DNA from: Schmidtea nova
Taxonomy: Eukaryota
Direction of reading: 5' to 3'
Assembly (NCBI GenBank): GCA_044892505.1
Contig: CM097884.1
Span: 29,698,001 to 29,762,000, forward strand
DNA: 64,000 bases
Of this stretch, positions 1 through 64,000 are shown in pieces. A model generated the notes under the pieces. The model worked only from the letters and a program-made list of their open reading frames with translations. It did no database searches and was not told the DNA's origin. Position numbers and translations under genes: made by a program. Position 1 is the stretch's first letter; the number at the start of each line of letters is the position of its first letter.

Positions 1-1
1 A

Positions 2-52
2 TCTGGCTACGAAATCAAGTCAACAATGAAAGAATGTTACAGCGAAACAGAG
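2..52 (+). CDS. 3' end of repeat exon 0 (SGYEIKSTMKECYSETE)
   Basis: Same sequence as the end of all other exons; GT donor at 53. Confidence 0.78.
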
Positions 53-3000
53 GTAAATAAAATGAATTCATTTTTACAAATAATGTCACTTAATCACTGC
101 CTAAAATCTATTATGATGTCTTTAAAGATAAATACTGTTTTGAAACCTTTATCATAATCTTTTATTTTAAATTCATATTTTAACATAGTTTATTTGTTAA
201 CCTCTTCATTGCATTATTATTTCTTAGATTTATTAATTTACAAAATATTTCGAGTCATTTTTAGAACTGTTTTCTTGTGTTTAGATTAAATCTGAAAACA
301 TTGCAACTGAAACTGGAATAACAGAATTGATACATACGAGCTTGGAAAAAGATACAAAAGCTTCAAATAAGTTAACTGACTATAGAGCAGAGGCCATTGA
401 CATGAGCAGTGAATCATTCAAAGATAGTGAAATTGTAGAAGTTTCTTTCGAAAAACTCAAAGACACAGCTGACTTCGGTAGTAGTGTAGAAAGTAAAATG
501 ATTGAAGTAGGAACAGAAACTTTCGGAGAAAAGCATAATGTATTCATCGATACGCTTACAAGTCATGAAGCTGAAATTAAATTCGAAGAAACATTGACTG
601 AGTTCATGTGTGAGTCGGTAAATAGTGAAAGCAGTTTTGAATGCAAATCAATTGAAGAAACCTGGAGTCAAGTTGGTGCAAAGGCAGTTGAAGTTGGTTC
701 AGAATTCAGAAGCGTGATTGTAGAATGTTCAAGTGAATATACAATTAGTATGAGAGAAAGTCAGGTAGACCAAGCAATAGCAACTGAAGAAGTCGGTGTA
801 ATGACAGTAGAATTAGTAGTGATAGATGAGTCATCGGTGTTTGAATTGAGGTGCTGCACAGTTGAATGTGAAACTGTAGAAATCGTAGAAGAAATAATTC
901 CTTTAGAGGCAAAGGAAGAGGAATCAGAAAGATTGTTAATTGAGAATGAAAGTGTAAGCTGGGAGATTCCAATGCTAGATATTGCTACTACAACAGTTAA
1001 GCCGACATTAGAAGATATTAGCACAGAAAATGTAATTGAGCATGTTGAATATAGTGGTGAATGGTGCCGAGAAATTAAGCATGAAAGTGAAATGTTTGAA
1101 ACAGAGAAATCAGGTTACTCAACAACGATCGTATCATCAGATGAAGACATTAAATATTGCTCAGTTGAAATACAATTCGAAGAAACAAAGTCTCGCAACA
1201 TAGAATCTGGCTACGAAATCAAGTCAACAATGAAAGAATGTTACAGCGAAACAGAGGTAAATAAAATGAATTCAGTTTTACAAAAAATGTCACTTAATCA
1301 CTGCCTAAAATCTATTATGATGTCTTTAAAGATAAATACTGTTTTGAAACCTTTATCATAATCTTTTATTTTAAATTCATATTTTAACATAGTTTATTTG
1401 TTAACCTCTTTATTGCATTATTATTTCTTAGATTTATTAATTTACAAAATATTTCGAGTCATTTTTAGAACTGTTTTCTTGTGTTTAGATTAAATCTGAA
1501 AACATTGCAACTGAAACTGGAATAACAGAATTGATACATACGAGCTTGGAAAAAGATACAAAAGCTTCAAATAAGTTAACTGACTATAGAGCAGAGGCCA
1601 TTGACATGAGCAGTGAATCATTCAAAGATAGTGAAATTGTAGAAGTTTCTTTCGAAAAACTCAAAGACACAGCTGACTTCGGTAGTAGTGTAGAAAGTAA
1701 AATGATTGAAGTAGGAACAGAAACTTTCGGAGAAAAGCATAATGTATTCATCGATACGCTTACAAGTCATGAAGCTGAAATTAAATTCGAAGAAACATTG
1801 ACTGAGTTCATGTGTGAGTCGGTAAATAGTGAAAGCAGTTTTGAATGCAAATCAATTGAAGAAACCTGGAGTCAAGTTGGTGCAAAGGCAGTTGAAGTTG
1901 GTTCAGAATTCAGAAGCGTGATTGTAGAATGTTCAAGTGAATATACAATTAGTATGAGAGAAAGTCAGGTAGACCAAGCAATAGCAACTGAAGAAGTCGG
2001 TGTAATGACAGTAGAATTAGTAGTGATAGATGAGTCATCGGTGTTTGAATTGAGGTGCTGCACAGTTGAATGTGAAACTGTAGAAATCGTAGAAGAAATA
2101 ATTCCTTTAGAGGCAAAGGAAGAGGAATCAGAAAGATTGTTAATTGAGAATGAAAGTGTAAGCTGGGAGATTCCAATGCTAGATATTGCTACTACAACAG
2201 TTAAGCCGACATTAGAAGATATTAGCACAGAAAAAGTTATTGAGCATGTTGAATATAGTGGTGAATGGTGCCGAGAAATTAAGCATGAAAGTGAAATGTT
2301 TGAAACAGAGAAATCAGGTTACTCAACAACGATCGTATCATCAGATGAAGACATTAAATATTGCTCAGTTGAAATACAATTCGAAGAAACAAAGTCTCGC
2401 AACATAGAATCTGGCTACGAAATCAAGTCAACAATGAAAGAATGTTACAGCGAAACAGAGGTAAATAAAATGAATTCAGTTTTACAAAAAATGTCACTTA
2501 ATCACTGCCTAAAATCTATTATGATGTCTTTAAAGATAAATACTGTTTTGAAACCTTTATCATAATCTTTTATTTTAAATTCATATTTTAACATAGTTTA
2601 TTTGTTAACCTCTTCATTGCATTATTATTTCTTAGATTTATTAATTTACAAAATATTTCGAGTCATTTTTAGAACTGTTTTCTTGTGTTTAGATTAAATC
2701 TGAAAACATTGCAACTGAAACTGGAATAACAGAATTGATACATACGAGCTTGGAAAAAGATACAAAAGCTTCAAATAAGTTAACTGACTATAGAGCAGAG
2801 GCCATTGACATGAGCAGTGAATCATTCAAAGATAGTGAAATTGTAGAAGTTTCTTTCGAAAAACTCAAAGACACAGCTGACTTCGGTAGTAGTGTAGAAA
2901 GTAAAATGATTGAAGTAGGAACAGAAACTTTCGGAGAAAAGCATAATGTATTCATCGATACGCTTACAAGTCATGAAGCTGAAATTAAATTCGAAGAAAC

Positions 3001-6000
3001 ATTGACTGAGTTCATGTGTGAGTCGGTAAATAGTGAAAGCAGTTTTGAATGCAAATCAATTGAAGAAACCTGGAGTCAAGTTGGTGCAAAGGCAGTTGAA
3101 GTTGGTTCAGAATTCAGAAGCGTGATTGTAGAATGTTCAAGTGAATATACAATTAGTATGAGAGAAAGTCAGGTAGACCAAGCAATAGCAACTGAAGACG
3201 TCGGTGTAATGACAGTAGAATTAGTAGTGATAGATGAGTCATCGGTGTTTGAATTGAGGTGCTGCACAGTTGAATGTGAAACTGTAGAAATTGTAGAAGA
3301 AATAATTCCTTTAGAGGCAAAGGAAGAGGAATCAGAAAGATTGTTAATTGAGAATGAAAGTGTAAGCTGGGAGATTCCAATGCTAGATATTGCTACTACA
3401 ACAGTTAAGCCGACATTAGAAGATATTACCACAGAAAAAGTTATTGAGCATGTTGAATATAGTGGTGAATGGTGCCGAGAAATTAAGCATGAAAGTGAAA
3501 TGTTTGAAACAGAGAAATCAGGTTACTCAACAACGATCGTATCATCAGATGAAGACATTAAATATTGCTCAGTTGAAATACAATTCGAAGAAACAAAGTC
3601 TCGCAACATAGAATCTGGCTACGAAATCAAGTCAACAATGAAAGAATGTTACAGCGAAACAGAGGTAAATAAAATGAATTCAGTTTTACAAAAAATGTCA
3701 CTTAATCACTGCCTAAAATCTATTATGATGTCTTTAAAGATAAATACTGTTTTGAAACCTTTATCATAATCTTTTATTTTAAATTCATATTTTAACATAG
3801 TTTATTTGTTAACCTCTTCATTGCATTATTATTTCTTAGATTTATTAATTTACAAAATATTTCGAGTCATTTTTAGAACTGTTTTCTTGTGTTTAGATTA
3901 AATCTGAAAACATTGCAACTGAAACTGGAATAACAGAATTGATACATACGAGCTTGGAAAAAGATACAAAAGCTTCAAATAAGTTAACTGACTATAGAGC
4001 AGAGGCCATTGACATGAGCAGTGAATCATTCAAAGATAGTGAAATTGTAGAAGTTTCTTTCGAAAAACTCAAAGACACAGCTGACTTCGGTAGTAGTGTA
4101 GAAAGTAAAATGATTGAAGTAGGAACAGAAACTTTCGGAGAAAAGCATAATGTATTCATCGATACGCTTACAAGTCATGAAGCTGAAATTAAATTCGAAG
4201 AAACATTGACTGAGTTCATGTGTGAGTCGGTAAATAGTGAAAGCAGTTTTGAATGCAAATCAATTGAAGAAACCTGGAGTCAAGTTGGTGCAAAGGCAGT
4301 TGAAGTTGGTTCAGAATTCAGAAGCGTGATTGTAGAATGTTCAAGTGAATATACAATTAGTATGAGAGAAAGTCAGGTAGACCAAGCAATAGCAACTGAA
4401 GAAGTCGGTGTAATGACAGTAGAATTAGTAGTGATAGATGAGTCATCGGTGTTTGAATTGAGGTGCTGCACAGTTGAATGTGAAACTGTAGAAATCGTAG
4501 AAGAAATAATTCCTTTAGAGGCAAAGGAAGAGGAATCAGAAAGATTGTTAATTGAGAATGAAAGTGTAAGCTGGGAGATTCCAATGCTAGATATTGCTAC
4601 TACAACAGTTAAGCCGACATTAGAAGATATTAGCACAGAAAATGTAATTGAGCATGTTGAATATAGTGGTGAATGGTGCCGAGAAATTAAGCATGAAAGT
4701 GAAATGTTTGAAACAGAGAAATCAGGTTACTCAACAACGATCGTATCATCAGATGAAGACATTAAATATTGCTCAGTTGAAATACAATTCGAAGAAACAA
4801 AGTCTCGCAACATAGAATCTGGCTACGAAATCAAGTCAACAATGAAAGAATGTTACAGCGAAACAGAGGTAAATAAAATGAATTCATTTTTACAAATAAT
4901 GTCACTTAATCACTGCCTAAAATCTATTATGATGTCTTTAAAGATAAATACTGTTTTGAAACCTTTATCATAATCTTTTATTTTAAATTCATATTTTAAC
5001 ATAGTTTATTTGTTAACCTCTTCATTGCATTATTATTTCTTAGATTTATTAATTTACAAAATATTTCGAGTCATTTTTAGAACTGTTTTCTTGTGTTTAG
5101 ATTAAATCTGAAAACATTGCAACTGAAACTGGAATAACAGAATTGATACATACGAGCTTGGAAAAAGATACAAAAGCTTCAAATAAGTTAACTGACTATA
5201 GAGCAGAGGCCATTGACATGAGCAGTGAATCATTCAAAGATAGTGAAATTGTAGAAGTTTCTTTCGAAAAACTCAAAGACACAGCTGACTTCGGTAGTAG
5301 TGTAGAAAGTAAAATGATTGAAGTAGGAACAGAAACTTTCGGAGAAAAGCATAATGTATTCATCGATACGCTTACAAGTCATGAAGCTGAAATTAAATTC
5401 GAAGAAACATTGACTGAGTTCATGTGTGAGTCGGTAAATAGTGAAAGCAGTTTTGAATGCAAATCAATTGAAGAAACCTGGAGTCAAGTTGGTGCAAAGG
5501 CAGTTGAAGTTGGTTCAGAATTCAGAAGCGTGATTGTAGAATGTTCAAGTGAATATACAATTAGTATGAGAGAAAGTCAGGTAGACCAAGCAATAGCAAC
5601 TGAAGACGTCGGTGTAATGACAGTAGAATTAGTAGTGATAGATGAGTCATTGGTGTTTGAATTGAGGTGCTGCACAGTTGAATGTGAAACTGTAGAAATT
5701 GTAGAAGAAATAATTCCTTTAGAGGCAAAGGAAGAGGAATCAGAAAGATTGTTAATTGAGAATGAAAGTGTAAGCTGGGAGATTCCAATGCTAGATATTG
5801 CTACTACAACAGTTAAGCCGACATTAGAAGATATTACCACAGAAAAAGTTATTGAGCATGTTGAATATAGTGGTGAATGGTGCCGAGAAATTAAGCATGA
5901 AAGTGAAATGTTTGAAACAGAGAAATCAGGTTACTCAACAACGATCGTATCATCAGATGAAGACATTAAATATTGCTCAGTTGAAATACAATTCGAAGAA

Positions 6001-9000
6001 ACAAAGTCTCGCAACATAGAATCTGGCTACGAAATCAAGTCAACAATGAAAGAATGTTACAGCGAAACAGAGGTAAATAAAATGAATTCAGTTTTACAAA
6101 AAATGTCACTTAATCACTGCCTAAAATCTATTATGATGTCTTTAAAGATAAATACTGTTTTGAAACCTTTATCATAATCTTTTATTTTAAATTCATATTT
6201 TAACATAGTTTATTTGTTAACCTCTTCATTGCATTATTATTTCTTAGATTTATTAATTTACAAAATATTTCGAGTCATTTTTAGAACTGTTTTCTTGTGT
6301 TTAGATTAAATCTGAAAACATTGCAACTGAAACTGGAATAACAGAATTGATACATACGAGCTTGGAAAAAGATACAAAAGCTTCAAATAAGTTAACTGAC
6401 TATAGAGCAGAGGCCATTGACATGAGCAGTGAATCATTCAAAGATAGTGAAATTGTAGAAGTTTCTTTCGAAAAACTCAAAGACACAGCTGACTTCGGTA
6501 GTAGTGTAGAAAGTAAAATGATTGAAGTAGGAACAGAAACTTTCGGAGAAAAGCATAATGTATTCATCGATACGCTTACAAGTCATGAAGCTGAAATTAA
6601 ATTCGAAGAAACATTGACTGAGTTCATGTGTGAGTCGGTAAATAGTGAAAGCAGTTTTGAATGCAAATCAATTGAAGAAACCTGGAGTCAAGTTGGTGCA
6701 AAGGCAGTTGAAGTTGGTTCAGAATTCAGAAGCGTGATTGTAGAATGTTCAAGTGAATATACAATTAGTATGAGAGAAAGTCAGGTAGACCAAGCAATAG
6801 CAACTGAAGAAGTCGGTGTAATGACAGTAGAATTAGTAGTGATAGATGAGTCATCGGTGTTTGAATTGAGGTGCTGCACAGTTGAATGTGAAACTGTAGA
6901 AATCGTAGAAGAAATAATTCCTTTAGAGGCAAAGGAAGAGGAATCAGAAAGATTGTTAATTGAGAATGAAAGTGTAAGCTGGGAGATTCCAATGCTAGAT
7001 ATTGCTACTACAACAGTTAAGCCGACATTAGAAGATATTAGCACAGAAAATGTAATTGAGCATGTTGAATATAGTGGTGAATGGTGCCGAGAAATTAAGC
7101 ATGAAAGTGAAATGTTTGAAACAGAGAAATCAGGTTACTCAACAACGATCGTATCATCAGATGAAGACATTAAATATTGCTCAGTTGAAATACAATTCGA
7201 AGAAACAAAGTCTCGCAACATAGAATCTGGCTACGAAATCAAGTCAACAATGAAAGAATGTTACAGCGAAACAGAGGTAAATAAAATGAATTCATTTTTA
7301 CAAATAATGTCACTTAATCACTGCCTAAAATCTATTATGATGTCTTTAAAGATAAATACTGTTTTGAAACCTTTATCATAATCTTTTATTTTAAATTCAT
7401 ATTTTAACATAGTTTATTTGTTAACCTCTTCATTGCATTATTATTTCTTAGATTTATTAATTTACAAAATATTTCGAGTCATTTTTAGAACTGTTTTCTT
7501 GTGTTTAGATTAAATCTGAAAACATTGCAACTGAAACTGGAATAACAGAATTGATACATACGAGCTTGGAAAAAGATACAAAAGCTTCAAATAAGTTAAC
7601 TGACTATAGAGCAGAGGCCATTGACATGAGCAGTGAATCATTCAAAGATAGTGAAATTGTAGAAGTTTCTTTCGAAAAACTCAAAGACACAGCTGACTTC
7701 GGTAGTAGTGTAGAAAGTAAAATGATTGAAGTAGGAACAGAAACTTTCGGAGAAAAGCATAATGTATTCATCGATACGCTTACAAGTCATGAAGCTGAAA
7801 TTAAATTCGAAGAAACATTGACTGAGTTCATGTGTGAGTCGGTAAATAGTGAAAGCAGTTTTGAATGCAAATCAATTGAAGAAACCTGGAGTCAAGTTGG
7901 TGCAAAGGCAGTTGAAGTTGGTTCAGAATTCAGAAGCGTGATTGTAGAATGTTCAAGTGAATATACAATTAGTATGAGAGAAAGTCAGGTAGACCAAGCA
8001 ATAGCAACTGAAGAAGTCGGTGTAATGACAGTAGAATTAGTAGTGATAGATGAGTCATCGGTGTTTGAATTGAGGTGCTGCACAGTTGAATGTGAAACTG
8101 TAGAAATCGTAGAAGAAATAATTCCTTTAGAGGCAAAGGAAGAGGAATCAGAAAGATTGTTAATTGAGAATGAAAGTGTAAGCTGGGAGATTCCAATGCT
8201 AGATATTGCTACTACAACAGTTAAGCCGACATTAGAAGATATTAGCACAGAAAATGTAATTGAGCATGTTGAATATAGTGGTGAATGGTGCCGAGAAATT
8301 AAGCATGAAAGTGAAATGTTTGAAACAGAGAAATCAGGTTACTCAACAACGATCGTATCATCAGATGAAGACATTAAATATTGCTCAGTTGAAATACAAT
8401 TCGAAGAAACAAAGTCTCGCAACATAGAATCTGGCTACGAAATCAAGTCAACAATGAAAGAATGTTACAGCGAAACAGAGGTAAATAAAATGAATTCAGT
8501 TTTACAAAAAATGTCACTTAATCACTGCCTAAAATCTATTATGATGTCTTTAAAGATAAATACTGTTTTGAAACCTTTATCATAATCTTTTATTTTAAAT
8601 TCATATTTTAACATAGTTTATTTGTTAACCTCTTTATTGCATTATTATTTCTTAGATTTATTAATTTACAAAATATTTCGAGTCATTTTTAGAACTGTTT
8701 TCTTGTGTTTAGATTAAATCTGAAAACATTGCAACTGAAACTGGAATAACAGAATTGATACATACGAGCTTGGAAAAAGATACAAAAGCTTCAAATAAGT
8801 TAACTGACTATAGAGCAGAGGCCATTGACATGAGCAGTGAATCATTCAAAGATAGTGAAATTGTAGAAGTTTCTTTCGAAAAACTCAAAGACACAGCTGA
8901 CTTCGGTAGTAGTGTAGAAAGTAAAATGATTGAAGTAGGAACAGAAACTTTCGGAGAAAAGCATAATGTATTCATCGATACGCTTACAAGTCATGAAGCT

Positions 9001-54000: not shown

Positions 54001-57000
54001 ATTGAGCATGTTGAATATAGTGGTGAATGGTGCCGAGAAATTAAGCATGAAAGTGAAATGTTTGAAACAGAGAAATCAGTTTACTCAACAACGATCATAT
54101 CATCAGATGAAGACATTAAATATTGCTCAGTTGAAATACAATTCGAAGAAACAAAGTCTCGCAACATAGAATCTGGCTACGAAATCAAGTCAACAATGAA
54201 AGAATGTTACAGCGAAACAGAGGTAAATAAAATAAATTCATTTTTACAAATAATGTCACTTATTCACTGCCAAAAATCTATCATGATGTCTTTAAAGATA
54301 AATACTGTTTTGAAACCTTTATCATAATATTTAATTTTTTAATCATATTTAATCATTGTTTATTTATTAACCTCTTCTTTGCAATTTTATGTCTTAGTTT
54401 TATTAATTTACAAAATATTTCGAGTCATTTTAGAACTGTTTTCTTGTGTTTAGATTAAATCTGAAAACATTGCAACTGAAACTGGAATAACAGAATTGAT
54501 ACATACGAGCTTGGAAAAAGATACAAAAGCTTCAAATAAGTTAACTGACTATAGAGCAGAGGCCATTGACATGAGCAGTGAATCATTCAAAGATAGTGAA
54601 ATTGTAGAAGTTTCTTTCGAAAAACTCAAAGACACAGTTGACTTTAGCGGTAGTGTAGAAAGTAAAATGATTGAAGTAGGAACAGAAACTTTCGGAGAAA
54701 AGCATAATGTATTCATCGATATGCTTACAAGTCATGAAGCTGAAATTAAATTCGAAGAAACTTTGACTGAGTTCATGTGTGAGACGGTAAATAGTGAAAG
54801 CAGTTTTGAATGCAAATCAGTTGAAGAAAGCTGGAGTCAAGTTGGTGCAAAGGCAGTTGAAGTTGGTTCAGAATTCAGAAGCGTGATTGTAGAATGTTCA
54901 AGTGAATATACAATTAGTATGAGAGAAAGTCAGGTAGACCAAGCAATAGAAACTGAAGAAGTCGGTGTAATGACAGTAGGATTGATAGTGATAGATGAGT
55001 CATCGGTGTTTGAATTGAGGTGCTGCACAGTTGAATGTGAAACTGTAGAAATCGTAGAAGAAATAATTCCTTTAGAGGCAAAGGAAGAGGAATCAGAAAG
55101 ATTGTTAATTGAGAATGAAAGTGTAAGCTGGGAGATTCCAATGCTAGATATATCTACTACAATAGTTAAGCCGACATTAGAAGATATTAGCACAGAAAAT
55201 GTAATTGAGCATGTTGAATATAGTGGTGAATGGTGCCGAGAAATTAAGCATGAAAGTGAAATGTTTGAAACAGAGAAATCAGTTTACTCAACAACGATCA
55301 TATCATCAGATGAAGACATTAAATATTGCTCAGTTGAAATACAATTCGAAGAAACAAAGTCTCGCAACATAGAATCTGGCTACGAAATCAAGTCAACAAT
55401 GAAAGAATGTTACAGCGAAACAGAGGTAAATAAAATAAATTCATTTTTACAAATAATGTCACTTATTCACTGCCTAAAATCTATCATGATGTCTTTAAAG
55501 ATAAATACTGTTTTGAAACCTTTATCATAATATTTAATTTTTTAATCATATTTAATCATTGTTTATTTATTAACCTCTTCTTTGCAATTTTATGTCTTAG
55601 TTTTATTAATTTACAAAATATTTCGAGTCATTTTAGAACTGTTTTCTTGTGTTTAGATTAAATCTGAAAACATTGCAACTGAAACTGGAATAACAGAATT
55701 GATACATACGAGCTTGGAAAAAGATACAAAAGCTTCAAATAAGTTAACTGACTATAGAGCAGAGGCCATTGACATGAGCAGTGAATCATTCAAAGATAGT
55801 GAAATTGTAGAAGTTTCTTTCGAAAAACTCAAAGACACAGTTGACTTTAGCGGTAGTGTAGAAAGTAAAATGATTGAAGTAGGAACAGAAACTTTCGGAG
55901 AAAAGCATAATGTATTCATCGATACGCTTACAAGTCATGAAGCTGAAATTAAATTCGAAGAAACTTTGACTGAGTTCATGCATGAGACGGTAAATAGTGA
56001 AAGCAGTTTTGAATGCAAATCAGTTGAAGAAAGCTGGAGTCAAGTTGGTGCAAAGGCAGTTGAAGTTGGTTCAGAATTCAGAAGCGTGATTGTAGAATGT
56101 TCAAGTGAATATACAATTAGTATGAGAGAAAGTCAGGTAGACCAAGCAATAGAAACTGAAGAAGTCGGTGTAATGACAGTAGGATTGATAGTGATAGATG
56201 AGTCATCGGTGTTTGAATTGAGGTGCTGCACAGTTGAATGTGAAACTGTAGAAATCGTAGAAGAAATAATTCCTTTAGAGGCAAAGGAAGAGGAATCAGA
56301 AAGATTGTTAATTGAGAATGAAAGTGTAAGCTGGGAGATTCCAATGCTAGATATTGCTACTACAACAGTTAAGCCGACATTAGAAGATATTAGCACAGAA
56401 AATGTAATTGAGCATGTTGAATATAGTGGTGAATGGTGCCGAGAAATTAAGCATGAAAGTGAAATGTTTGAAACAGAGAAATCAGTTTACTCAACAACGA
56501 TCATATCATCAGATGAAGACATTAAATATTGCTCAGTTGAAATACAATTCGAAGAAACAAAGTCTCGCAACATAGAATCTGGCTACGAAATCAAGTCAAC
56601 AATGAAAGAATGTTACAGCGAAACAGAGGTAAATAAAATAAATTCATTTTTACAAATAATGTCACTTATTCACTGCCTAAAATCTATCATGATGTCTTTA
56701 AAGATAAATACTGTTTTGAAACCTTTATCATAATATTTAATTTTTTAATCATATTTAATCATTGTTTATTTATTAACCTCTTCTTTGCAATTTTATGTCT
56801 TAGTTTTATTAATTTACAAAATATTTCGAGTCATTTTAGAACTGTTTTCTTGTGTTTAGATTAAATCTGAAAACATTGCAACTGAAACTGGAATAACAGA
56901 ATTGATACATACGAGCTTGGAAAAAGATACAAAAGCTTCAAATAAGTTAACTGACTATAGAGCAGAGGCCATTGACATGAGCAGTGAATCATTCAAAGAT

Positions 57001-60000
57001 AGTGAAATTGTAGAAGTTTCTTTCGAAAAACTCAAAGACACAGTTGACTTTAGCGGTAGTGTAGAAAGTAAAATGATTGAAGTAGGAACAGAAACTTTCG
57101 GAGAAAAGCATAATGTATTCATCGATACGCTTACAAGTCATGAAGCTGAAATTAAATTCGAAGAAACTTTGACTGAGTTCATGCATGAGACGGTAAATAG
57201 TGAAAGCAGTTTTGAATGCAAATCAGTTGAAGAAAGCTGGAGTCAAGTTGGTGCAAAGGCAGTTGATGTTGGTTCAGAATTCAGAAGCGTGATTGTAGAA
57301 TGTTCAAGTGAATATACAATTAGTATGAGAGAAAGTCAGGTAGACCAAGCAATAGAAACTGAAGAAGTCGGTGTAATGACAGTAGGATTGATAGTGATAG
57401 ATGAGTCATCGGTGTTTGAATTGAGGTGCTGCACAGTTGAATGTGAAACTGTAGAAATCGTAGAAGAAATAATTCCTTTAGAGGCAAAGGAAGAGGAATC
57501 AGAAAGATTGTTAATTGAGAATGAAAGTGTAAGCTGGGAGATTCCAATGCTAGATATTGCTACTACAACAGTTAAGCCGACATTAGAAGATATTAGCACA
57601 GAAAATGTAATTGAGCATGTTGATTATAGTGGTGAATGGTGCCGAGAAATTATGCATGAAAGTGAAATGTTTGAAACAGAGAAATCAGTTTACTCAACAA
57701 CGATCATATCATCAGATGAAGACATTAAATATTGCTCAGTTGAAATACAATTCGAAGAAACAAAGTCTCGCAACATAGAATCTGGCTACGAAATCAAGTC
57801 AACAATGAAAGAATGTTACAGCGAAACAGAGGTAAATAAAATAAATTCATTTTTACAAATAATGTCACTTATTCACTGCCTAAAATCTATCATGATGTCT
57901 TTAAAGATAAATACTGTTTTGAAACCTTTATCATAATATTTAATTTTTTAATCATTTTTAATCATTGTTTATTTATTAACCTCTTCTTTGCAATTTTATG
58001 TCTTAGTTTTATTAATTTACAAAATATTTCGAGTCATTTTTAGAACTGTTTTCTTGTGTTTAGATTAAATCTGAAAACATTGCAACTGAAACTGGAATAA
58101 CAGAATTGATACATACGAGCTTGGAAAAAGATACAAAAGCTTCAAATAAGTTAACTGACTATAGAGCAGAGGCCATTGACATGAGCAGTGAATCATTCAA
58201 AGATAGTGAAATTGTAGAAGTTTCTTTCGAAAAACTCAAAGACACAGTTGACTTTAGCGGTAGTGTAGAAAGTAAAATGATTGAAGTAGGAACAGAAACT
58301 TTCGGAGGAAAGCATAATGTATTCATCGATACGCTTACAAGTCATGAAGCTGAAATTAAATTCGAAGAAACTTTGACTGAGTTCATGTATGAGACGGTAA
58401 ATAGTGAAAGCAGTTTTGAATGCAAATCAGTTGAAGAAAGCTGGAGTCAAGTTGGTGCAAAGGCAGTTGAAGTTGGTTCAGAATTCAGAAGCGTGATTGT
58501 AGAATGTTCAAGTGAATATACAATTAGTATGAGAGAAAGTCAGGTAGACCAAGTAATAGAAACTGAAGAAGTCGGTGTAATGACAGTAGGATTGATAGTG
58601 ATAGATGAGTCATCGGTGTTTGAATTGAGGTGCTGCACAGTTGAATGTGAAACTGTAGAAATCGTAGAAGAAATAATTCCTTTAGAGGCAAAGGAAGAGG
58701 AATCAGAAAGATTGTTAATTGAGAATGAAAGTGTAAGCTGGGAGATTCCAATGCTAGATATTGCTACTACAACAGTTAAGCCGACATTAGAAGATATTAG
58801 CACAGAAAATGTAATTGAGCATGTTGAATATAGTGGTGAATGGTGCCGAGAAATTAAGCATGAAAGTGAAATGTTTGAAACAGAGAAATCAGTTTACTCA
58901 ACAACGATCATATCATCAGATGAAGACATTAAATATTGCTCAGTTGAAATACAATTCGAAGAAACAAAGTCTCGCAACATAGAATCTGGCTACGAAATCA
59001 AGTCAACAATGAAAGAATGTTACAGCGAAACAGAGGTAAATAAAATAAATTCATTTTTACAAATAATGTCACTTATTCACTGCCTAAAATCTATCATGAT
59101 GTCTTTAAAGATAAATACTGTTTTGAAACCTTTATCATAATATTTAATTTTTTAATCATATTTAATCATTGTTTATTTATTAACCTCTTCTTTGCAATTT
59201 TATGTCTTAGTTTTATTAATTTACAAAATATTTCGAGTCATTTTAGAACTGTTTTCTTGTGTTTAGATTAAATCTGAAAACATTGCAACTGAAACTGGAA
59301 TAACAGAATTGATACATACGAGCTTGGAAAAAGATACAAAAGCTTCAAATAAGTTAACTGACTATAGAGCAGAGGCCATTGACATGAGCAGTGAATCATT
59401 CAAAGATAGTGAAATTGTAGAAGTTTCTTTCGAAAAACTCAAAGACACAGTTGACTTTAGCGGTAGTGTAGAAAGTAAAATGATTGAAGTAGGAACAGAA
59501 ACTTTCGGAGAAAAGCATAATGTATTCATCGATACGCTTACAAGTCATGAAGCTGAAATTAAATTCGAAGAAACTTTGACTGAGTTCATGCATGAGACGG
59601 TAAATAGTGAAAGCAGTTTTGAATGCAAATCAGTTGAAGAAAGCTGGAGTCAAGTTGGTGCAAAGGCAGTTGATGTTGGTTCAGAATTCAGAAGCGTGAT
59701 TGTAGAATGTTCAAGTGAATATACAATTAGTATGAGAGAAAGTCAGGTAGACCAAGCAATAGAAACTGAAGAAGTCGGTGTAATGACAGTAGGATTGATA
59801 GTGATAGATGAGTCATCGGTGTTTGAATTGAGGTGCTGCACAGTTGAATGTGAAACTGTAGAAATCGTAGAAGAAATAATTCCTTTAGAGGCAAAGGAAG
59901 AGGAATCAGAAAGATTGTTAATTGAGAATGAAAGTGTAAGCTGGGAGATTCCAATGCTAGATATTGCTACTACAACAGTTAAGCCGACATTAGAAGATAT

Positions 60001-63000
60001 TAGCACAGAAAATGTAATTGAGCATGTTGAATATAGTGGTGAATGGTGCCGAGAAATTATGCATGAAAGTGAAATGTTTGAAACAGAGAAATCAGTTTAC
60101 TCAACAACGATCATATCATCAGATGAAGACATTAAATATTGCTCAGTTGAAATACAATTCGAAGAAACAAAGTCTCGCAACATAGAATCTGGCTACGAAA
60201 TCAAGTCAACAATGAAAGAATGTTACAGCGAAACAGAGGTAAATAAAATAAATTCATTTTTACAAATAATGTCACTTATTCACTGCCTAAAATCTATCAT
60301 GATGTCTTTAAAGATAAATACTGTTTTGAAACCTTTATCATAATATTTAATTTTTTAATCATATTTAATCATTGTTTATTTATTAACCTCTTCTTTGCAA
60401 TTTTATGTCTTAGTTTTATTAATTTACAAAATATTTCGAGTCATTTTAGAACTGTTTTCTTGTGTTTAGATTAAATCTGAAAACATTGCAACTGAAACTG
60501 GAATAACAGAATTGATACATACGAGCTTGGAAAAAGATACAAAAGCTTCAAATAAGTTAACTGACTATAGAGCAGAGGCCATTGACATGAGCAGTGAATC
60601 ATTCAAAGATAGTGAAATTGTAGAAGTTTCTTTCGAAAAACTCAAAGACACAGTTGACTTTAGCGGTAGTGTAGAAAGTAAAATGATTGAAGTAGGAACA
60701 GAAACTTTCGGAGAAAAGCATAATGTATTCATCGATACGCTTACAAGTCATGAAGCTGAAATTAAATTCGAAGAAACTTTGACTGAGTTCATGCATGAGA
60801 CGGTAAATAGTGAAAGCAGTTTTGAATGCAAATCAGTTGAAGAAAGCTGGAGTCAAGTTGGTGCAAAGGCAGTTGATGTTGGTTCAGAATTCAGAAGCGT
60901 GATTGTAGAATGTTCAAGTGAATATACAATTAGTATGAGAGAAAGTCAGGTAGACCAAGCAATAGAAACTGAAGAAGTCGGTGTAATGACAGTAGGATTG
61001 ATAGTGATAGATGAGTCATCGGTGTTTGAATTGAGGTGCTGCACAGTTGAATGTGAAACTGTAGAAATCGTAGAAGAAATAATTCCTTTAGAGGCAAAGG
61101 AAGAGGAATCAGAAAGATTGTTAATTGAGAATGAAAGTGTAAGCTGGGAGATTCCAATGCTAGATATTGCTACTACAACAGTTAAGCCGACATTAGAAGA
61201 TATTAGCACAGAAAATGTAATTGAGCATGTTGAATATAGTGGTGAATGGTGCCGAGAAATTATGCATGAAAGTGAAATGTTTGAAACAGAGAAATCAGTT
61301 TACTCAACAACGATCATATCATCAGATGAAGACATTAAATATTGCTCAGTTGAAATACAATTCGAAGAAACAAAGTCTCGCAACATAGAATCTGGCTACG
61401 AAATCAAGTCAACAATGAAAGAATGTTACAGCGAAACAGAGGTAAATAAAATAAATTCATTTTTACAAATAATGTCACTTATTCACTGCCTAAAATCTAT
61501 CATGATGTCTTTAAAGATAAATACTGTTTTGAAACCTTTATCATAATATTTAATTTTTTAATCATTTTTAATCATTGTTTATTTATTAACCTCTTCTTTG
61601 CAATTTTATGTCTTAGTTTTATTAATTTACAAAATATTTCGAGTCATTTTTAGAACTGTTTTCTTGTGTTTAGATTAAATCTGAAAACATTGCAACTGAA
61701 ACTGGAATAACAGAATTGATACATACGAGCTTGGAAAAAGATACAAAAGCTTCAAATAAGTTAACTGACTATAGAGCAGAGGCCATTGACATGAGCAGTG
61801 AATCATTCAAAGATAGTGAAATTGTAGAAGTTTCTTTCGAAAAACTCAAAGACACAGTTGACTTTAGCGGTAGTGTAGAAAGTAAAATGATTGAAGTAGG
61901 AACAGAAACTTTCGGAGGAAAGCATAATGTATTCATCGATACGCTTACAAGTCATGAAGCTGAAATTAAATTCGAAGAAACTTTGACTGAGTTCATGTAT
62001 GAGACGGTAAATAGTGAAAGCAGTTTTGAATGCAAATCAGTTGAAGAAAGCTGGAGTCAAGTTGGTGCAAAGGCAGTTGAAGTTGGTTCAGAATTCAGAA
62101 GCGTGATTGTAGAATGTTCAAGTGAATATACAATTAGTATGAGAGAAAGTCAGGTAGACCAAGTAATAGAAACTGAAGAAGTCGGTGTAATGACAGTAGG
62201 ATTGATAGTGATAGATGAGTCATCGGTGTTTGAATTGAGGTGCTGCACAGTTGAATGTGAAACTGTAGAAATCGTAGAAGAAATAATTCCTTTAGAGGCA
62301 AAGGAAGAGGAATCAGAAAGATTGTTAATTGAGAATGAAAGTGTAAGCTGGGAGATTCCAATGCTAGATATTGCTACTACAACAGTTAAGCCGACATTAG
62401 AAGATATTAGCACAGAAAATGTAATTGAGCATGTTGAATATAGTGGTGAATGGTGCCGAGAAATTAAGCATGAAAGTGAAATGTTTGAAACAGAGAAATC
62501 AGTTTACTCAACAACGATCATATCATCAGATGAAGACATTAAATATTGCTCAGTTGAAATACAATTCGAAGAAACAAAGTCTCGCAACATAGAATCTGGC
62601 TACGAAATCAAGTCAACAATGAAAGAATGTTACAGCGAAACAGAGGTAAATAAAATAAATTCATTTTTACAAATAATGTCACTTATTCACTGCCTAAAAT
62701 CTATCATGATGTCTATAAAGATAAATACTGTTTTGAAACCTTTATCATAATATTTAATTTTTTAATCATATTTAATCATTGTTTATTTATTAACCTCTTC
62801 TTTGCAATTTTATGTCTTAGTTTTATTAATTTACAAAATATTTCGAGTCATTTTAGAACTGTTTTCTTGTGTTTAGATTAAATCTGAAAACATTGCAACT
62901 GAAACTGGAATAACAGAATTGATACATACGAGCTTGGAAAAAGATACAAAAGCTTCAAATAAGTTAACTGACTATAGAGCAGAGGCCATTGACATGAGCA

Positions 63001-63848
63001 GTGAATCATTCAAAGATAGTGAAATTGTAGAAGTTTCTTTCGAAAAACTCAAAGACACAGTTGACTTTAGCGGTAGTGTAGAAAGTAAAATGATTGAAGT
63101 AGGAACAGAAACTTTCGGAGAAAAGCATAATGTATTCATCGATACGCTTACAAGTCATGAAGCTGAAATTAAATTCGAAGAAACTTTGACTGAGTTCATG
63201 TATGAGACGGTAAATAGTGAAAGCAGTTTTGAATGCAAATCAGTTGAAGAAAGCTGGAGTCAAGTTGGTGCAAAGGCAGTTGAAGTTGGTTCAGAATTCA
63301 GAAGCGTGATTGTAGAATGTTCAAGTGAATATACAATTAGTATGAGAGAAAGTCAGGTAGACCAAGTAATAGAAACTGAAGAAGTCGGTGTAATGACAGT
63401 AGGATTGATAGTGATAGATGAGTCATCGGTGTTTGAATTGAGGTGCTGCACAGTTGAATGTGAAACTGTAGAAATCGTAGAAGAAATAATTCCTTTAGAG
63501 GCAAAGGAAGAGGAATCAGAAAGATTGTTAATTGAGAATGAAAGTGTAAGCTGGGAGATTCCAATGTTAGATATTGCTACTACAACAGTTAAGCCGACAT
63601 TAGAAGATATTAGCACAGAAAATGTAATTGAGCATGTTGAATATAGTGGTGAATGGTGCCGAGAAATTAAGCATGAAAATGAAATGTTTGAAACAGAGAA
63701 ATCAGTTTACTCAACAACGATCATATCATCAGATGAAGACATTAAATATTGCTCAGTTGAAATACAATTCGAAGAAACAAAGTCTCGCAACATAGAATCT
63801 GGCTACGAAATCAAGTCAACAATGAAAGAATGTTACAGCGAAACAGAG
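2..63848 (+). CDS. Internal fragment of a giant multi-exon gene: spliced tandem-repeat acidic (Glu/Ser/Thr/Val/Ile-rich) protein, at least 53 x 324 aa
   Basis: Each open frame starts immediately after an in-frame TAG that is part of TTTTCTTGTGTTTAG (acceptor). Acidic coding composition stops at GAG|GTAAAT (donor). Exon is 972 bp = 324 codons, phase 0-0, and joining gives ...CYSETE|IKSENIATETG... in frame. No stops or indels in any exon. Confidence 0.82.
53..284 (+). other. Phase-0 GT-AG intron, A type (232 bp)
   Basis: GTAAAT...TTTTCTTGTGTTTAG; about 79% AT by manual count of the next copy, versus roughly 65% AT in sampled exon lines. Confidence 0.8.
285..1256 (+). CDS. Repeat exon 1 (324 aa, type A)
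   Basis: AG|ATTAAA to GAG|GT; frame open throughout. Confidence 0.8.
1254..1262 (+). promoter_or_regulatory. 5' splice donor GAG|GTAAAT (repeated in each unit)
   Basis: Matches the AG|GTAA consensus and coincides with the composition switch; unchanged in the copies inspected. Confidence 0.8.
1257..1488 (+). other. Phase-0 intron, A type (representative; one follows every exon)
   Basis: GT...AG, 232 bp, T-rich 3' end. Confidence 0.8.
1470..1490 (+). promoter_or_regulatory. Polypyrimidine tract and 3' splice acceptor TTTTCTTGTGTTTAG|AT (repeated in each unit)
   Basis: Y-rich tract ending in TAG; the TAG is an in-frame stop directly before the open frame; candidate branch A in GTCAT at 1461. 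Confidence 0.78.
1489..2460 (+). CDS. Repeat exon 2 (A)
   Basis: Same boundaries; TEKV allele. Confidence 0.8.
2693..3664 (+). CDS. Repeat exon 3 (A)
   Basis: TED, ITT and TEKV alleles. Confidence 0.8.
3897..4868 (+). CDS. Repeat exon 4 (A)
   Basis: Consensus A exon. Confidence 0.8.
5101..6072 (+). CDS. Repeat exon 5 (A)
   Basis: Like exon 3 plus S>L. Confidence 0.8.
6305..7276 (+). CDS. Repeat exon 6 (A)
   Basis: Consensus A exon. Confidence 0.8.
7509..8480 (+). CDS. Repeat exon 7 (A)
   Basis: Consensus A exon. Confidence 0.8.
8713..9684 (+). CDS. Repeat exon 8 (A)
   Basis: TEKV allele. Confidence 0.8.
9917..10888 (+). CDS. Repeat exon 9 (A)
   Basis: Private F>L and I>S. Confidence 0.8.
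11121..12092 (+). CDS. Repeat exon 10 (A)
   Basis: EISF and TEKV alleles. Confidence 0.8.
12325..13296 (+). CDS. Repeat exon 11 (A)
   Basis: IDKL allele. Confidence 0.8.
13529..14500 (+). CDS. Repeat exon 12 (A)
   Basis: IDKL allele; same peptide as exon 11. Confidence 0.8.
14733..15704 (+). CDS. Repeat exon 13 (A)
   Basis: Private G>S. Confidence 0.8.
15937..16908 (+). CDS. Repeat exon 14 (A)
   Basis: Consensus peptide; synonymous TAC>TAT. Confidence 0.8.
17141..18112 (+). CDS. Repeat exon 15 (A)
   Basis: EISF; private T>K. Confidence 0.8.
18345..19316 (+). CDS. Repeat exon 16 (A)
   Basis: EISF allele. Confidence 0.8.
19549..20520 (+). CDS. Repeat exon 17 (A)
   Basis: Private C>S and a synonymous CCG. 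Confidence 0.8.
20753..21724 (+). CDS. Repeat exon 18 (A)
   Basis: EISF; private M>R. Confidence 0.8.
21957..22928 (+). CDS. Repeat exon 19 (last pure A)
   Basis: EISF allele. Confidence 0.8.
23161..24132 (+). CDS. Repeat exon 20 (A/B chimera)
   Basis: A-type DTADFGSS followed by B-type alleles; private D>G and Q>H. Confidence 0.8.
24364..25335 (+). CDS. Repeat exon 21 (B, most divergent)
   Basis: Five private missense changes. Confidence 0.8.
25567..26538 (+). CDS. Repeat exon 22 (B)
   Basis: MYE allele. Confidence 0.8.
26539..26770 (+). other. Phase-0 intron, B type (representative)
   Basis: GTAAAT...TTTAG, 232 bp, diverged central core. Confidence 0.8.
26771..27742 (+). CDS. Repeat exon 23 (B)
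   Basis: VRL allele. Confidence 0.8.
27975..28946 (+). CDS. Repeat exon 24 (B)
   Basis: VRL; private V>L. Confidence 0.8.
29179..30150 (+). CDS. Repeat exon 25 (B)
   Basis: VRL allele. Confidence 0.8.
30383..31354 (+). CDS. Repeat exon 26 (B)
   Basis: VGL allele. Confidence 0.8.
31587..32558 (+). CDS. Repeat exon 27 (B with A-type patch)
   Basis: VRL; carries SIEETW. Confidence 0.8.
32791..33762 (+). CDS. Repeat exon 28 (B)
   Basis: VGL allele. Confidence 0.8.
33995..34966 (+). CDS. Repeat exon 29 (B)
   Basis: VRL allele. Confidence 0.8.
35199..36170 (+). CDS. Repeat exon 30 (B)
   Basis: VGL allele. Confidence 0.8.
36403..37374 (+). CDS. Repeat exon 31 (B)
   Basis: VGL allele. Confidence 0.8.
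37607..38578 (+). CDS. Repeat exon 32 (B)
   Basis: VRL; synonymous GTG>GTT. Confidence 0.8.
38811..39782 (+). CDS. Repeat exon 33 (B)
   Basis: VGL allele. Confidence 0.8.
40015..40986 (+). CDS. Repeat exon 34 (B)
   Basis: VRL; synonymous GTT. Confidence 0.8.
41219..42190 (+). CDS. Repeat exon 35 (B)
   Basis: VGL allele. Confidence 0.8.
42423..43394 (+). CDS. Repeat exon 36 (B)
   Basis: VRL; synonymous GTT; private K>M. Confidence 0.8.
43626..44597 (+). CDS. Repeat exon 37 (B)
   Basis: Y/V/N haplotype; private P>L. Confidence 0.8.
44829..45800 (+). CDS. Repeat exon 38 (B)
   Basis: MRE allele; private P>L. Confidence 0.8.
46032..47003 (+). CDS. Repeat exon 39 (B)
   Basis: Y/V/N haplotype. 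Confidence 0.8.
47235..48206 (+). CDS. Repeat exon 40 (B)
   Basis: QVI allele. Confidence 0.8.
48439..49410 (+). CDS. Repeat exon 41 (B)
   Basis: B consensus. Confidence 0.8.
49642..50613 (+). CDS. Repeat exon 42 (B)
   Basis: G/Y/V haplotype. Confidence 0.8.
50845..51816 (+). CDS. Repeat exon 43 (B)
   Basis: Y/V/N haplotype; private E>K. Confidence 0.8.
52048..53019 (+). CDS. Repeat exon 44 (B)
   Basis: IDML allele. Confidence 0.8.
53251..54222 (+). CDS. Repeat exon 45 (B)
   Basis: IDML allele. Confidence 0.8.
54454..55425 (+). CDS. Repeat exon 46 (B)
   Basis: IDML; private A>S and T>I. Confidence 0.8.
55657..56628 (+). CDS. Repeat exon 47 (B)
   Basis: MHE allele. Confidence 0.8.
56860..57831 (+). 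CDS. Repeat exon 48 (B)
   Basis: H/D/M haplotype; private E>D. Confidence 0.8.
58064..59035 (+). CDS. Repeat exon 49 (B)
   Basis: G/Y/V haplotype. Confidence 0.8.
59267..60238 (+). CDS. Repeat exon 50 (B)
   Basis: H/D/M haplotype. Confidence 0.8.
60470..61441 (+). CDS. Repeat exon 51 (B)
   Basis: H/D/M haplotype. Confidence 0.8.
61674..62645 (+). CDS. Repeat exon 52 (B)
   Basis: G/Y/V haplotype. Confidence 0.8.
62877..63848 (+). CDS. Repeat exon 53 (B)
   Basis: Y/V/N haplotype; donor GT at 63849, and the intron runs off the window. Confidence 0.8.
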
Positions 63849-64000
63849 GTAAATAAAATAAATTCATTTTTACAAATAATGTCACTTATTCACTGCCAAA
63901 AATCTATCATGATGTCTTTAAAGATAAATACTGTTTTGAAACCTTTATCATAATATTTAATTTTTTAATCATATTTAATCATTGTTTATTTATTAACCTC

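What the first reader, a model, noticed from the sequence alone, without database searches (positions are those of the whole stretch)
1..64000. Hidden giant gene: 53+ near-identical exon-intron modules splice into one >17,000-aa protein
Seen: each ORF-track start is a TTG, and the frame is open 14 codons further upstream, up to an in-frame TAG inside TTTTCTTGTGTTTAG. The first in-frame ATG is 39 codons in (402). The acidic composition ends exactly at GAG|GTAAAT. AG-to-GT is 972 nt (324 codons), so both junctions are phase 0 and copies join as YSETE|IKSEN. Inference: this is the middle of one gene with at least 51.5 kb of spliced CDS and at least 17,172 aa, not 53 small genes. Known precedents for iterated exon+intron units are the spider flagelliform silk gene, LPA kringle IV-2, and the nebulin/titin triplicated regions. 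I do not recognise this repeat, and this many near-identical copies with the array still open at both ends is unusual.
Basis: partly seen in the sequence, partly recalled or inferred. Interest (0 to 1): 0.92.

Follow-up and report, generated by a model that had tools for sequence, protein, structure and literature searches.

The report
Giant repeated-exon gene, acidic protein
The whole 64-kb window is the inside of one very large animal gene built from 53 or more nearly identical exon-plus-intron modules that are spliced head to tail into a huge, very acidic repeat protein of an undescribed family, whose function is still unknown.

Summary
The window holds 53 complete modules of 1203/1204 nt. 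Each has a 972-nt stop-free exon (324 codons, phase 0 at both ends) and a 231/232-nt AT-rich intron, GTAAAT...TGTGTTTAG.

The single-spliced-gene reading is supported by four findings:
- RNA-type runs of a sister organism cover the exons very deeply and the spacer not at all. Their contigs join exon end to next exon start at the predicted site.
- A 1003-aa database protein (86% identical) reads ...SEIE|IKSEN..., then runs into a unique 539-aa tail.
- Six relatives at 33-71% identity keep the same module, with 960-978-nt phase-0 exons.
- Purifying selection acts between species (dN/dS 0.24), and the introns are unalignable.

The repeat matches no Pfam or PDB entry and gets no confident fold. 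Each unit has net charge -51 and E+S+T 42%.

Not shown: that all 53 exons sit in one mRNA, splicing in the window's own species, the gene's ends, and the function. The architecture is known from spider Flag silk; the protein family is new. The organism is probably a planarian (inference). The scan holds no earlier finding of this repeat on other DNA.

The parts
1..64000 (+). Internal segment of a tandem array of exon+intron modules (period 1203/1204 nt), open at both ends
1..52 (+). 3' end of a truncated exon (ends ...ACAGAG)
53..284 (+). First complete intron (232 nt, GC about 20%, GTAAAT...TTTTCTTGTGTTTAG). It has an AATAAA at +4 and an in-frame stop after 34 codons
   Evidence: No Rfam match and no significant fold
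285..1256 (+). Exon of unit 1: 972 nt, 324 codons, phase 0-0. Encodes the polyanionic repeat IKSEN...YSETE (pI 4.2, net charge -51)
   Evidence: Relatives
285..23160 (+). Subfamily A, units 1-19 (copies differ by about 5 nt per 1204)
23161..24132 (+). Exon of unit 20, a chimera: A-type up to 23356, B-type from 23469. This is a recombination or gene-conversion junction
24364..63848 (+). Subfamily B, units 21-53. It has 12 fixed exon differences from A and about 39 nt differences per unit. The 231-nt intron variant occurs only here
1251..1262 (+). Representative donor site ACAGAG|GTAAAT, identical in all 54 copies
   Evidence: RNA-type contigs leave the exon exactly at 1256
1474..1494 (+). Representative acceptor TTTTCTTGTGTTTAG|ATTAAA; the string GTGTTTAG|ATTAAA is identical in all 53 copies
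   Evidence: RNA-type contigs re-enter at 1489
63849..64000 (+). Truncated last intron

Best explanation
The window is an internal piece of one protein-coding gene of an animal, probably a planarian flatworm of the genus Schmidtea (the organism is inferred).

Gene structure. The gene is built from 53 or more tandem 1.2-kb modules. Each module is one symmetric phase-0 exon of 972 nt plus one 231/232-nt AT-rich intron. Splicing removes every intron and joins consecutive exons in frame (...YSETE|IKSEN...). The mRNA then encodes a chain of 324-residue repeats. If all 53 exons are included, that is at least 17,172 aa, about 1.94 MDa, with a net charge near -2,700. In the sister organism the last repeat is joined in frame to a unique 539-aa acidic tail.

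Array evolution. The modules, introns included, are kept alike by unequal crossing-over and gene conversion. This leaves two subfamilies, one chimeric unit and duplicated blocks of several units.

Protein (inferred). The protein is a highly expressed polyanion with no predicted fold that acts through length and charge plus short conserved motifs. I think it is more likely an intracellular scaffold or spacer than a secreted mucin-like product (about 55:45).

What is shown: module anatomy, open frame, splice joins in a relative's RNA, conservation and selection. What is inferred: one mRNA holding all exons, translation, organism and function.
For: Anatomy: 53 stop-free 972-nt exons and 54 identical donors. 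Only one of six frames is open.

RNA. Runs X5 and X6 (guessed RNA, organism B) have summed word depth of about 10^4 to 10^6 on both exon flanks and 0 on 1291-1450. Contigs join 1256 to 1489/1492 in both runs, with the first codon AAC in place of ATT. One variant carries ATG GAG in place of ACA GAG. One loose end behind 1256 reads ATCAAATCTGAAAACA, which is the start of the next exon.

Protein P0001. It is 86% identical. It holds a partial unit plus a full unit joined as KECFSEIE|IKSENIATETG, followed by KECFSEIE|FKNTIFE... and a unique tail.

Deep conservation of the module. Exons are 972/969/960/969/969/978 nt in L002, L003, L004, L005, L008 and L009. All have a YAG acceptor and a GTA donor. 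Contigs wrap with periods of 1201, 1818 and 1192 nt (L008 wrap). L009 carries parts of three consecutive exons (one complete).

Selection. dN/dS is 0.24 against L008 (dN 0.18, dS 0.75) and 0.07-0.5 for other pairs. Within the array the intron is four times more diverse than the exon (pi 0.044 vs 0.011). The intron is no more alignable to the L008 intron than to shuffles, while the exons are 78% identical. There are 22 invariant columns and few indels across 16 relatives.

DNA-type runs X1 and X3 tile exon end, intron and exon start at even depth.
Against: No RNA run of the window's own species was available. The splicing evidence comes from an organism whose contigs are mostly 90-95% alike. 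Its zero depth on the spacer could partly reflect intron divergence beyond the 90% cut-off.

The listed junction contigs have low depth (12-34) compared with the exon bodies.

The kind of runs X1-X4 is unknown. If they were RNA, their even spacer coverage would mean unspliced RNA.

Poly-A loose ends occur inside the exon at 1030, 1074, 1086 and 1723. All follow short genomic A-runs, so internal oligo-dT priming is likely, but internal polyadenylation is not excluded.

Within the array pN/pS is 1.2 (10 synonymous, 51 non-synonymous sites). Individual copies therefore show no codon-level constraint.

Nothing shows how many exons one mRNA holds. No start, signal peptide or end of the gene lies in the window.
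Confidence: 0.8

Rival explanations
1. The gene and its splicing are real, but mature mRNAs hold only a subset of the units. All donors and acceptors are identical and in phase 0, so any donor can join any downstream acceptor. Internal polyadenylation could also cut transcripts short. The products would then be heterogeneous and far smaller than 17,000 aa.
For: Splice sites are identical in all copies, so exon skipping would be invisible in short reads. Poly-A loose ends lie inside the exon in both RNA-type runs. The only database protein holds 1.4 units, although that probably reflects a collapsed draft assembly.
Against: The poly-A ends all follow short genomic A-runs (GAAAA, GAAA, CAGAAA) and have no AATAAA upstream, which is typical of internal priming. 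The array is maintained with every one of 53 exons intact, and the chance of no stop among 61 random changes is 0.027. Large arrays are kept in several lineages.
Confidence: 0.25
2. The array is a macrosatellite that arose by amplification of an exon+intron fragment and is not translated. It would be non-coding DNA, or at most a spliced non-coding RNA.
For: Within-array changes show no codon bias (pN/pS 1.2, equal diversity at the three codon positions). The repeat has no recognisable domain or fold.
Against: A 324-codon frame is kept open in 53 of 53 copies. It is also kept in six diverged lineages, each with exon length a multiple of three. Between species dN/dS is 0.13-0.5. Invariant residues and motifs exist. 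The repeat joins in frame to a unique coding tail. RNA depth is very high.
Confidence: 0.04
3. The copy number or order in the window is an assembly artefact, from over-expansion or mis-joining of a shorter array.
For: Near-identical 1.2-kb repeats are hard to assemble. I could not obtain a single-copy depth baseline, because only one read-laying run is allowed.
Against: Units carry a structured, non-random pattern of variants: two subfamilies, one chimeric unit and duplicated blocks such as units 1-2 = 7-8. Artefactual expansion does not usually produce this. Summed word depths over the unit are in the hundreds in X1 and the thousands to tens of thousands in X3, without a single-copy baseline.
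Confidence: 0.1
4. There are 53 independent small genes, each unit with its own start and end.
For: Prokaryote-style ORF calling gives one TTG-initiated ORF per unit. An AATAAA sits just after each donor.
Against: There is no ATG until codon 40. The frame is open right up to the AG. Contigs join exon to exon. No RNA depth lies on the spacer, which would have to hold the promoter and the 3' end. P0001 reads through the join.
Confidence: 0.02

Closest known systems
Spider flagelliform silk gene (Nephila Flag) and Argiope MaSp2: iterated exon-intron modules with near-identical introns (Hayashi & Lewis 2000, as cited in PMC3563967)
   Same: Both are tandem modules of one exon plus one intron, homogenised together within a single gene. 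Both encode a very large repetitive protein with non-repetitive termini.
   Different: There is no sequence or domain relation to spidroins. Here the exon is a complex 324-aa acidic unit, not G/P-rich simple motifs. There are at least 53 modules in the window alone. Here introns vary more than exons. From memory, Flag shows the opposite pattern; only refers to an exon-versus-intron contrast.
Human LPA kringle IV-2 coding macrosatellite, and the nebulin/titin triplicated exon blocks (own knowledge)
   Same: Both are in-frame, multi-exon coding units repeated in tandem at near identity by unequal crossing-over. Protein size scales with copy number.
   Different: Those units encode known folded domains (kringle; nebulin repeats; Ig/Fn3). 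This unit matches no Pfam or PDB family and gets no confident model. Copy-number polymorphism was not tested here.
Giant repeat proteins made of many identical units, e.g. Marinomonas MpAFP region II (about 120 identical 104-aa repeats, Ca2+-dependent fold; abstract of PMC4083281, seen) and the Chironomus Balbiani-ring secretory proteins (own knowledge)
   Same: Both reach megadalton size through many near-identical repeats. Both are acidic, and folding might depend on cations.
   Different: Those repeats lie within single huge exons or bacterial ORFs. Nothing is shown here about Ca2+, secretion or fold.
Multivalent LC8 (dynein light chain) partners with TQT anchor motifs, such as ASCIZ/ATMIN (own knowledge)
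   Same: The relative's C-terminal tail (P0001:465-1003) has four exact TQT motifs. Only 1 of 20,000 shuffles reaches four. The tail also has several [VSC]Q[TI] variants in a disordered acidic context.
   Different: The motifs lie in the tail of a sister species' protein, not in this window. There is motif evidence only, with no binding data and no homology.

Membership tests
Iterated exon-intron module gene under concerted evolution (Flag-type architecture) | Tandem units that each hold one exon and one intron | tested here: met
   53 units of 972 + 231/232 nt
Iterated exon-intron module gene under concerted evolution (Flag-type architecture) | Introns nearly identical within the gene (homogenised with the exons) | tested here: met
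   Intron pi 0.044, 16 distinct introns among 53. Units within a subfamily differ by about 5 nt per 1204
Iterated exon-intron module gene under concerted evolution (Flag-type architecture) | Exons are frame-preserving and are joined in the mRNA | tested here: met
   Phase 0-0 in all copies. Exon-exon contigs in RNA-type runs of a relative. The join is present in P0001. Not tested in the window's own species
Spidroin protein family | Spidroin N- and C-terminal domains and G/A/P-rich motifs | tested here: not met
   No Pfam hit for the unit or for the relative's tail. Composition is E 20%, S 13%, G 3%, P 0.9%
Non-coding satellite or macrosatellite | No conserved reading frame and no protein-level constraint | tested here: not met
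   The frame is open in 53 of 53 copies and in six diverged lineages. dN/dS is 0.13-0.5
Mucin-type secreted tandem-repeat protein | Pro/Thr/Ser-rich repeats | tested here: not met
   P 0.9%. S+T is 22% but E is 20%. Alternating hydrophobic and acidic pattern
Mucin-type secreted tandem-repeat protein | Signal peptide and Cys-rich terminal domains | not testable with these tools
   The N-terminus lies outside the window. The relative's tail has no Pfam domain and no hydrophobic segment
Titin/PEVK-like elastic giant protein | Ig/Fn3 domains or a PEVK composition | tested here: not met
   No Pfam hit above the cut-off. P 0.9%
Intron-hosted small-RNA array (snoRNA host-gene type) | A conserved structured RNA in each intron | tested here: not met
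   No Rfam match at E<=1. Intron fold z -1.4. The intron is not conserved against L008
Multivalent LC8-binding disordered protein | Several TQT-type anchor motifs in a disordered region | tested here: inconclusive
   Four TQT motifs in P0001:465-1003, matched by 1 of 20,000 shuffles. None in the window's repeat. Binding is not testable here

The most novel reading that the evidence does not exclude
All 53 or more exons, and probably more beyond both window ends, are included in one mRNA. This flatworm would then make a previously undescribed polyanionic protein with no predicted fold, of about 2 MDa or more, possibly in the size class of titin. The protein would belong to a lineage-restricted family. 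The whole exon-intron array architecture has been kept since lineages now only 33% identical diverged, and the gene gives very deep coverage in RNA-type runs of the sister organism.
Probability: 0.55. Interest if true: 0.75.

Novelty: new member of a known kind. Interest (0 to 1): 0.62.

Why it matters
If one transcript carries the whole array, this is one of the largest proteins of any animal, and it belongs to a family with no annotation at all. In 1.84 billion cluster representatives I found one UniParc entry and otherwise only unnamed unit-length fragments (one labelled just 'hypothetical protein').

It is also a clean natural case of concerted evolution acting on exon+intron modules. Selection is visible between species (dN/dS 0.24) but not among copies within the array (pN/pS 1.2).

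In practice, such loci are split into dozens of false small ORFs or masked as satellites. Recognising this one corrects gene annotation and read-mapping in these genomes. It also points to an abundant product whose cell type and role can be tested directly by in situ hybridisation and RNAi.

Tried and rejected
I replaced it with motif spacing.
- Pfam on the unit gave only LPD37 at E 0.069, below the cut-off, which I rejected. Pfam on the relative's tail gave nothing.
- The ESM Atlas on the unit and on the tail gave best scores of 0.69 and 0.66, inside the noise range. The nearest clusters were disordered proteins such as FSCB and KNL1; I treat them as leads only.
- A PDB profile search found nothing.
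- AlphaFold2 with 9 and then 16 sequences gave pLDDT 29 and 34, so I ran no fold search.
- I looked for internal sub-repeats of the 324-aa unit by hhalign on thirds and halves. Probabilities were 13% or less, so I rejected the idea.
- P0009, a 3781-aa protein hit at E 1e-5, is a Thr-rich repeat protein on a 37-kb metagenome contig that looks bacterial; I rejected it as a compositional match.
- L001, the contig of P0003, is a chimeric metagenome scaffold: GC jumps from 0.36 to about 0.58 and bacterial genes follow. I did not use it.
- A search for relatives of the tail returned only the tail itself.
- A metagenome scan for array edges or an N-terminus returned only unit-length contigs.
- Look-ups of earlier findings for flanking windows of the array found nothing.
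- An intron-hosted RNA was not supported.
- Four literature searches plus a text search of two papers found no description of this gene.
- In one search a contig of X3 'goes back 1970->771'. This is only exon continuity across the ends of my chosen stretch, not proof of tandem order.
Full report
**1. The observation**

Reading the first 2.6 kb and locating the two boundary strings over the window gave 54 copies of ACAGAG|GTAAAT and 53 of GTGTTTAG|ATTAAA. Spacing is 1204 nt (37 times) or 1203 nt (16 times).

All 53 AG-to-GT intervals are exactly 972 nt and none contains a stop. The spacers are 232 nt (37) or 231 nt (16).

Only + frame 1 is open. The other five frames carry 7-48 stops per 972 nt. 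Reading into the spacer gives a stop after 34 codons. Exons have 35.5% GC and spacers 20.5%.

The window starts inside an exon (1-52) and ends inside a spacer (63849-64000). Tandem Repeats Finder was blind to the array only because its period limit is 500.

**2. Is it spliced?**

One sequencing-run search gave four runs of 'organism A' that hold about two thirds of the sampled words. It also gave five runs guessed to be RNA from 'organism B' that hold about 5%.

I laid X1, X3, X5 and X6 on window:771-1970. That stretch is just under one period, with the spacer (1257-1488) in the middle.

- **X1 and X3.** They cover exon and spacer at similar depth and show no joints across the spacer. Contigs tile exon end, spacer and exon start (records 3, 4, 5). 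They also carry Nextera adaptor ends. I read them as DNA-type libraries of the window's species.
- **X5 and X6.** Summed word depths are 10^4 to 10^6 on both exon flanks and exactly 0 from 1291 to 1450.
- **Junctions.** Contigs in both RNA-type runs go from 1256 to 1492, with AAC standing where the window has ATT (1489-1491). That is an exon-exon join whose first codon differs. A further contig reads GAA ATG GAG|ATT. A loose end behind 1256 reads ATCAAATCTGAAAACA, which is the start of the next exon with one synonymous change.

Several caveats apply.

- Most organism-B contigs are only 90-95% alike, so part of the zero on the spacer could reflect intron divergence beyond my 90% cut-off.
- The listed junction contigs are shallow (12-34).
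- The kind of runs X1-X4 is not on record.
- My first reading of the X3 contig that 'goes back 1970->771' was wrong. It only reflects exon continuity across the ends of the stretch I chose.

**3. Independent support from proteins**

A phmmer search of the 324-aa unit against 1.84 billion cluster representatives found eight true relatives.

P0001 is a 1003-aa UniParc entry, 86% identical to the unit. It holds the last 140 residues of one unit and a complete second unit, joined as ...KECFSEIE|IKSENIATETG.... After that comes ...KECFSEIE|FKNTIFECESS... and a unique 539-residue acidic tail. In the sister organism, then, repeats are joined to each other and to a non-repetitive C-terminus at the predicted phase-0 boundary.

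The tail has no Pfam family, no relatives in the length-limited search and no hydrophobic segment.

**4. The module is old and under selection**

The other relatives are unit-length ORFs on 1.1-2.6-kb metagenome contigs.

In six distinct loci I located the boundaries. Exons are 972, 969, 960, 969, 969 and 978 nt. All are multiples of three and stop-free. Each is preceded by a pyrimidine tract plus YAG and followed by GTAA, GTAC or GTAT.

Three contigs wrap on themselves with periods of 1201, 1818 and 1192 nt. L009 holds one complete exon between two partial ones. Tandem exon-intron arrays of this family therefore exist in lineages whose units are only 33-71% identical to this one.

- dN/dS is 0.24 for the least saturated pair (window vs L008: dN 0.18, dS 0.75). 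Other pairs give 0.07-0.5.
- The window's intron aligns to the L008 intron no better than to shuffles (score 29.5 vs 27.4 +/- 5.3), while the exons are 78% identical.
- Within the array the intron is four times more diverse than the exon (pi 0.044 vs 0.011). The exon changes show no codon bias: 10 synonymous and 51 non-synonymous sites, pN/pS 1.2. The absence of any stop among 61 variable sites has a probability of about 0.027 under random change.

My reading is that selection acts on the unit as a family and on frame integrity. It hardly acts on single residues of single copies, as expected when function depends on many redundant repeats.

**5. Array dynamics**

Units 1-19 form subfamily A and units 21-53 form subfamily B. 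They differ at 12 fixed exon sites and about 39 nt per unit, against about 5 nt within a subfamily.

Unit 20 is a chimera that switches from A to B between 23356 and 23469. Blocks are duplicated (units 1-2 = 7-8, and 42 = 49). Units 22-36 show a weak two-unit periodicity.

These are the marks of unequal crossing-over and gene conversion. They also argue that the assembly is not a simple artefactual expansion.

**6. The protein**

One unit is 36.6 kDa, with pI 4.2, E 20%, S 13%, T 9%, I+V 17%, P 0.9% and net charge -51. On the charge-hydropathy plot it lies just on the disordered side.

- It has no internal sub-repeats.
- It has no Pfam family, no PDB relative even with a 16-sequence profile and no Atlas neighbour above noise.
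- AlphaFold2 gave pLDDT 29 with 9 sequences and 34 with 16.

Against pure disorder, 22 columns are invariant. Motifs such as MSSE, DTVDFSGSVE, IEVGTETFGEK, DTLTSHE, EW, ETEK and SSD..EYC persist, and unit length barely changes across relatives. A cation-dependent or otherwise unpredicted fold is therefore not excluded.

Fifty-three units give 17,172 aa, about 1.94 MDa and about -2,700 net charge.

Function is not shown. I favour an intracellular polyanionic scaffold or spacer slightly over a secreted product (about 55:45), for these reasons:
- Cysteine is nearly invariant (at least 90% of relatives) at only one position and invariant at none.
- The composition is not mucin-like.
- The relative's tail has four TQT motifs, matched by 1 of 20,000 shuffles. 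From my own knowledge, TQT is the anchor of dynein light chain LC8 partners.
- The nearest Atlas clusters, though within noise, are mostly intracellular disordered proteins.

**7. Rivals**

- A non-coding macrosatellite and 53 separate genes are both contradicted by sections 2-4.
- An intron-hosted RNA array is not supported. There is no Rfam match, the intron fold has z -1.4, and the intron is not conserved.
- Exon skipping or internal termination that gives smaller products remains open. All splice sites are identical, and poly-A loose ends occur at 1030, 1074, 1086 and 1723. All follow short genomic A-runs and lack an upstream AATAAA, so internal oligo-dT priming is the simpler reading.
- An inflated copy number in the assembly cannot be excluded without a depth baseline.

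**8. Organism (inference only)**

Several things point to a Schmidtea species other than S. mediterranea, with organism B plausibly S. mediterranea:
- The sequence is AT-rich.
- First-reader notes on this genome describe giant enveloped Gypsy elements of 24-29 kb and a planarian spliced leader.
- The 2024 DNA-type runs carry Nextera ends.

That paper's Table 1 lists longest transcripts of 76.7 and 94.2 kb for S. mediterranea and 28-36 kb for the sister species. Whether these are this gene is untested.

**9. What is known**

[quoted passage not shown] From my own knowledge it also matches the LPA KIV-2 and nebulin/titin repeat blocks.

The protein is not a member of any of those families (see the membership table). 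Four literature searches found no description of this gene.

I class it as a new member of a known kind of gene architecture that encodes a new protein family.

**10. Verdict**

Confidence is 0.8 for 'internal part of one spliced, translated repeated-exon gene'. It is about 0.55 for 'one polypeptide of 17,000 aa or more'. Interest is 0.62.

Noticed in passing
window 23161-24132: Unit 20 is a chimera: A-type at exon sites 185-196 (to 23356) and B-type from site 309 (23469) onward. This marks a single recombination or conversion junction between the two subfamilies.
   Followed up: yes
window 285-9916 and 49642-63848: Whole units recur identically at a distance: units 1=7, 2=8, 4=6, 42=49, 44=45. 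Units 22-36 are more alike at lag 2 than at lag 1. This suggests multi-unit block duplications.
   Followed up: partly
window, all exons: Among copies, pN/pS is about 1.2 with equal diversity at the three codon positions, yet the exon is four times less diverse than the intron. Between species dN/dS is 0.24. The mix of strong family-level and absent copy-level constraint is not fully explained.
   Followed up: partly
window 1030, 1074, 1086, 1723 (and the same sites in every unit): RNA-type contigs of the sister organism run into poly-A after short genomic A-runs inside the exon. Internal oligo-dT priming is likely; internal polyadenylation is not excluded.
   Followed up: partly
window 1257-1268 (every intron start): The donor context GTAAATAAAATG places a canonical AATAAA three bases into each intron. 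It could act as a cryptic polyadenylation signal if splicing fails.
   Followed up: no
P0001:465-1003 (not in the window): The relative's unique C-terminal tail has four exact TQT motifs, matched by 1 of 20,000 shuffles. Three of them are followed 9-11 residues later by a second [VS]Q[TI] motif. This is a possible multivalent LC8-binding region.
   Followed up: partly
L001:1-4966: A metagenome scaffold joins 750 nt of this repeat (GC 0.36) to bacterial Wzy/polysaccharide-deacetylase genes (GC about 0.58). It looks like a chimeric assembly, not a gene transfer.
   Followed up: partly
L002, L003, L004, L005, L008, L009: Exon length is held at 960-978 nt in lineages down to 33% identity, while spacer length ranges from about 220 to about 850 nt. 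Such strict length conservation is unusual for a disordered repeat.
   Followed up: partly
window 24133-24363 and the later 231-nt introns: A one-base deletion variant of the intron (231 nt) occurs only in subfamily B, in 16 of its units, and is clustered along the array.
   Followed up: no
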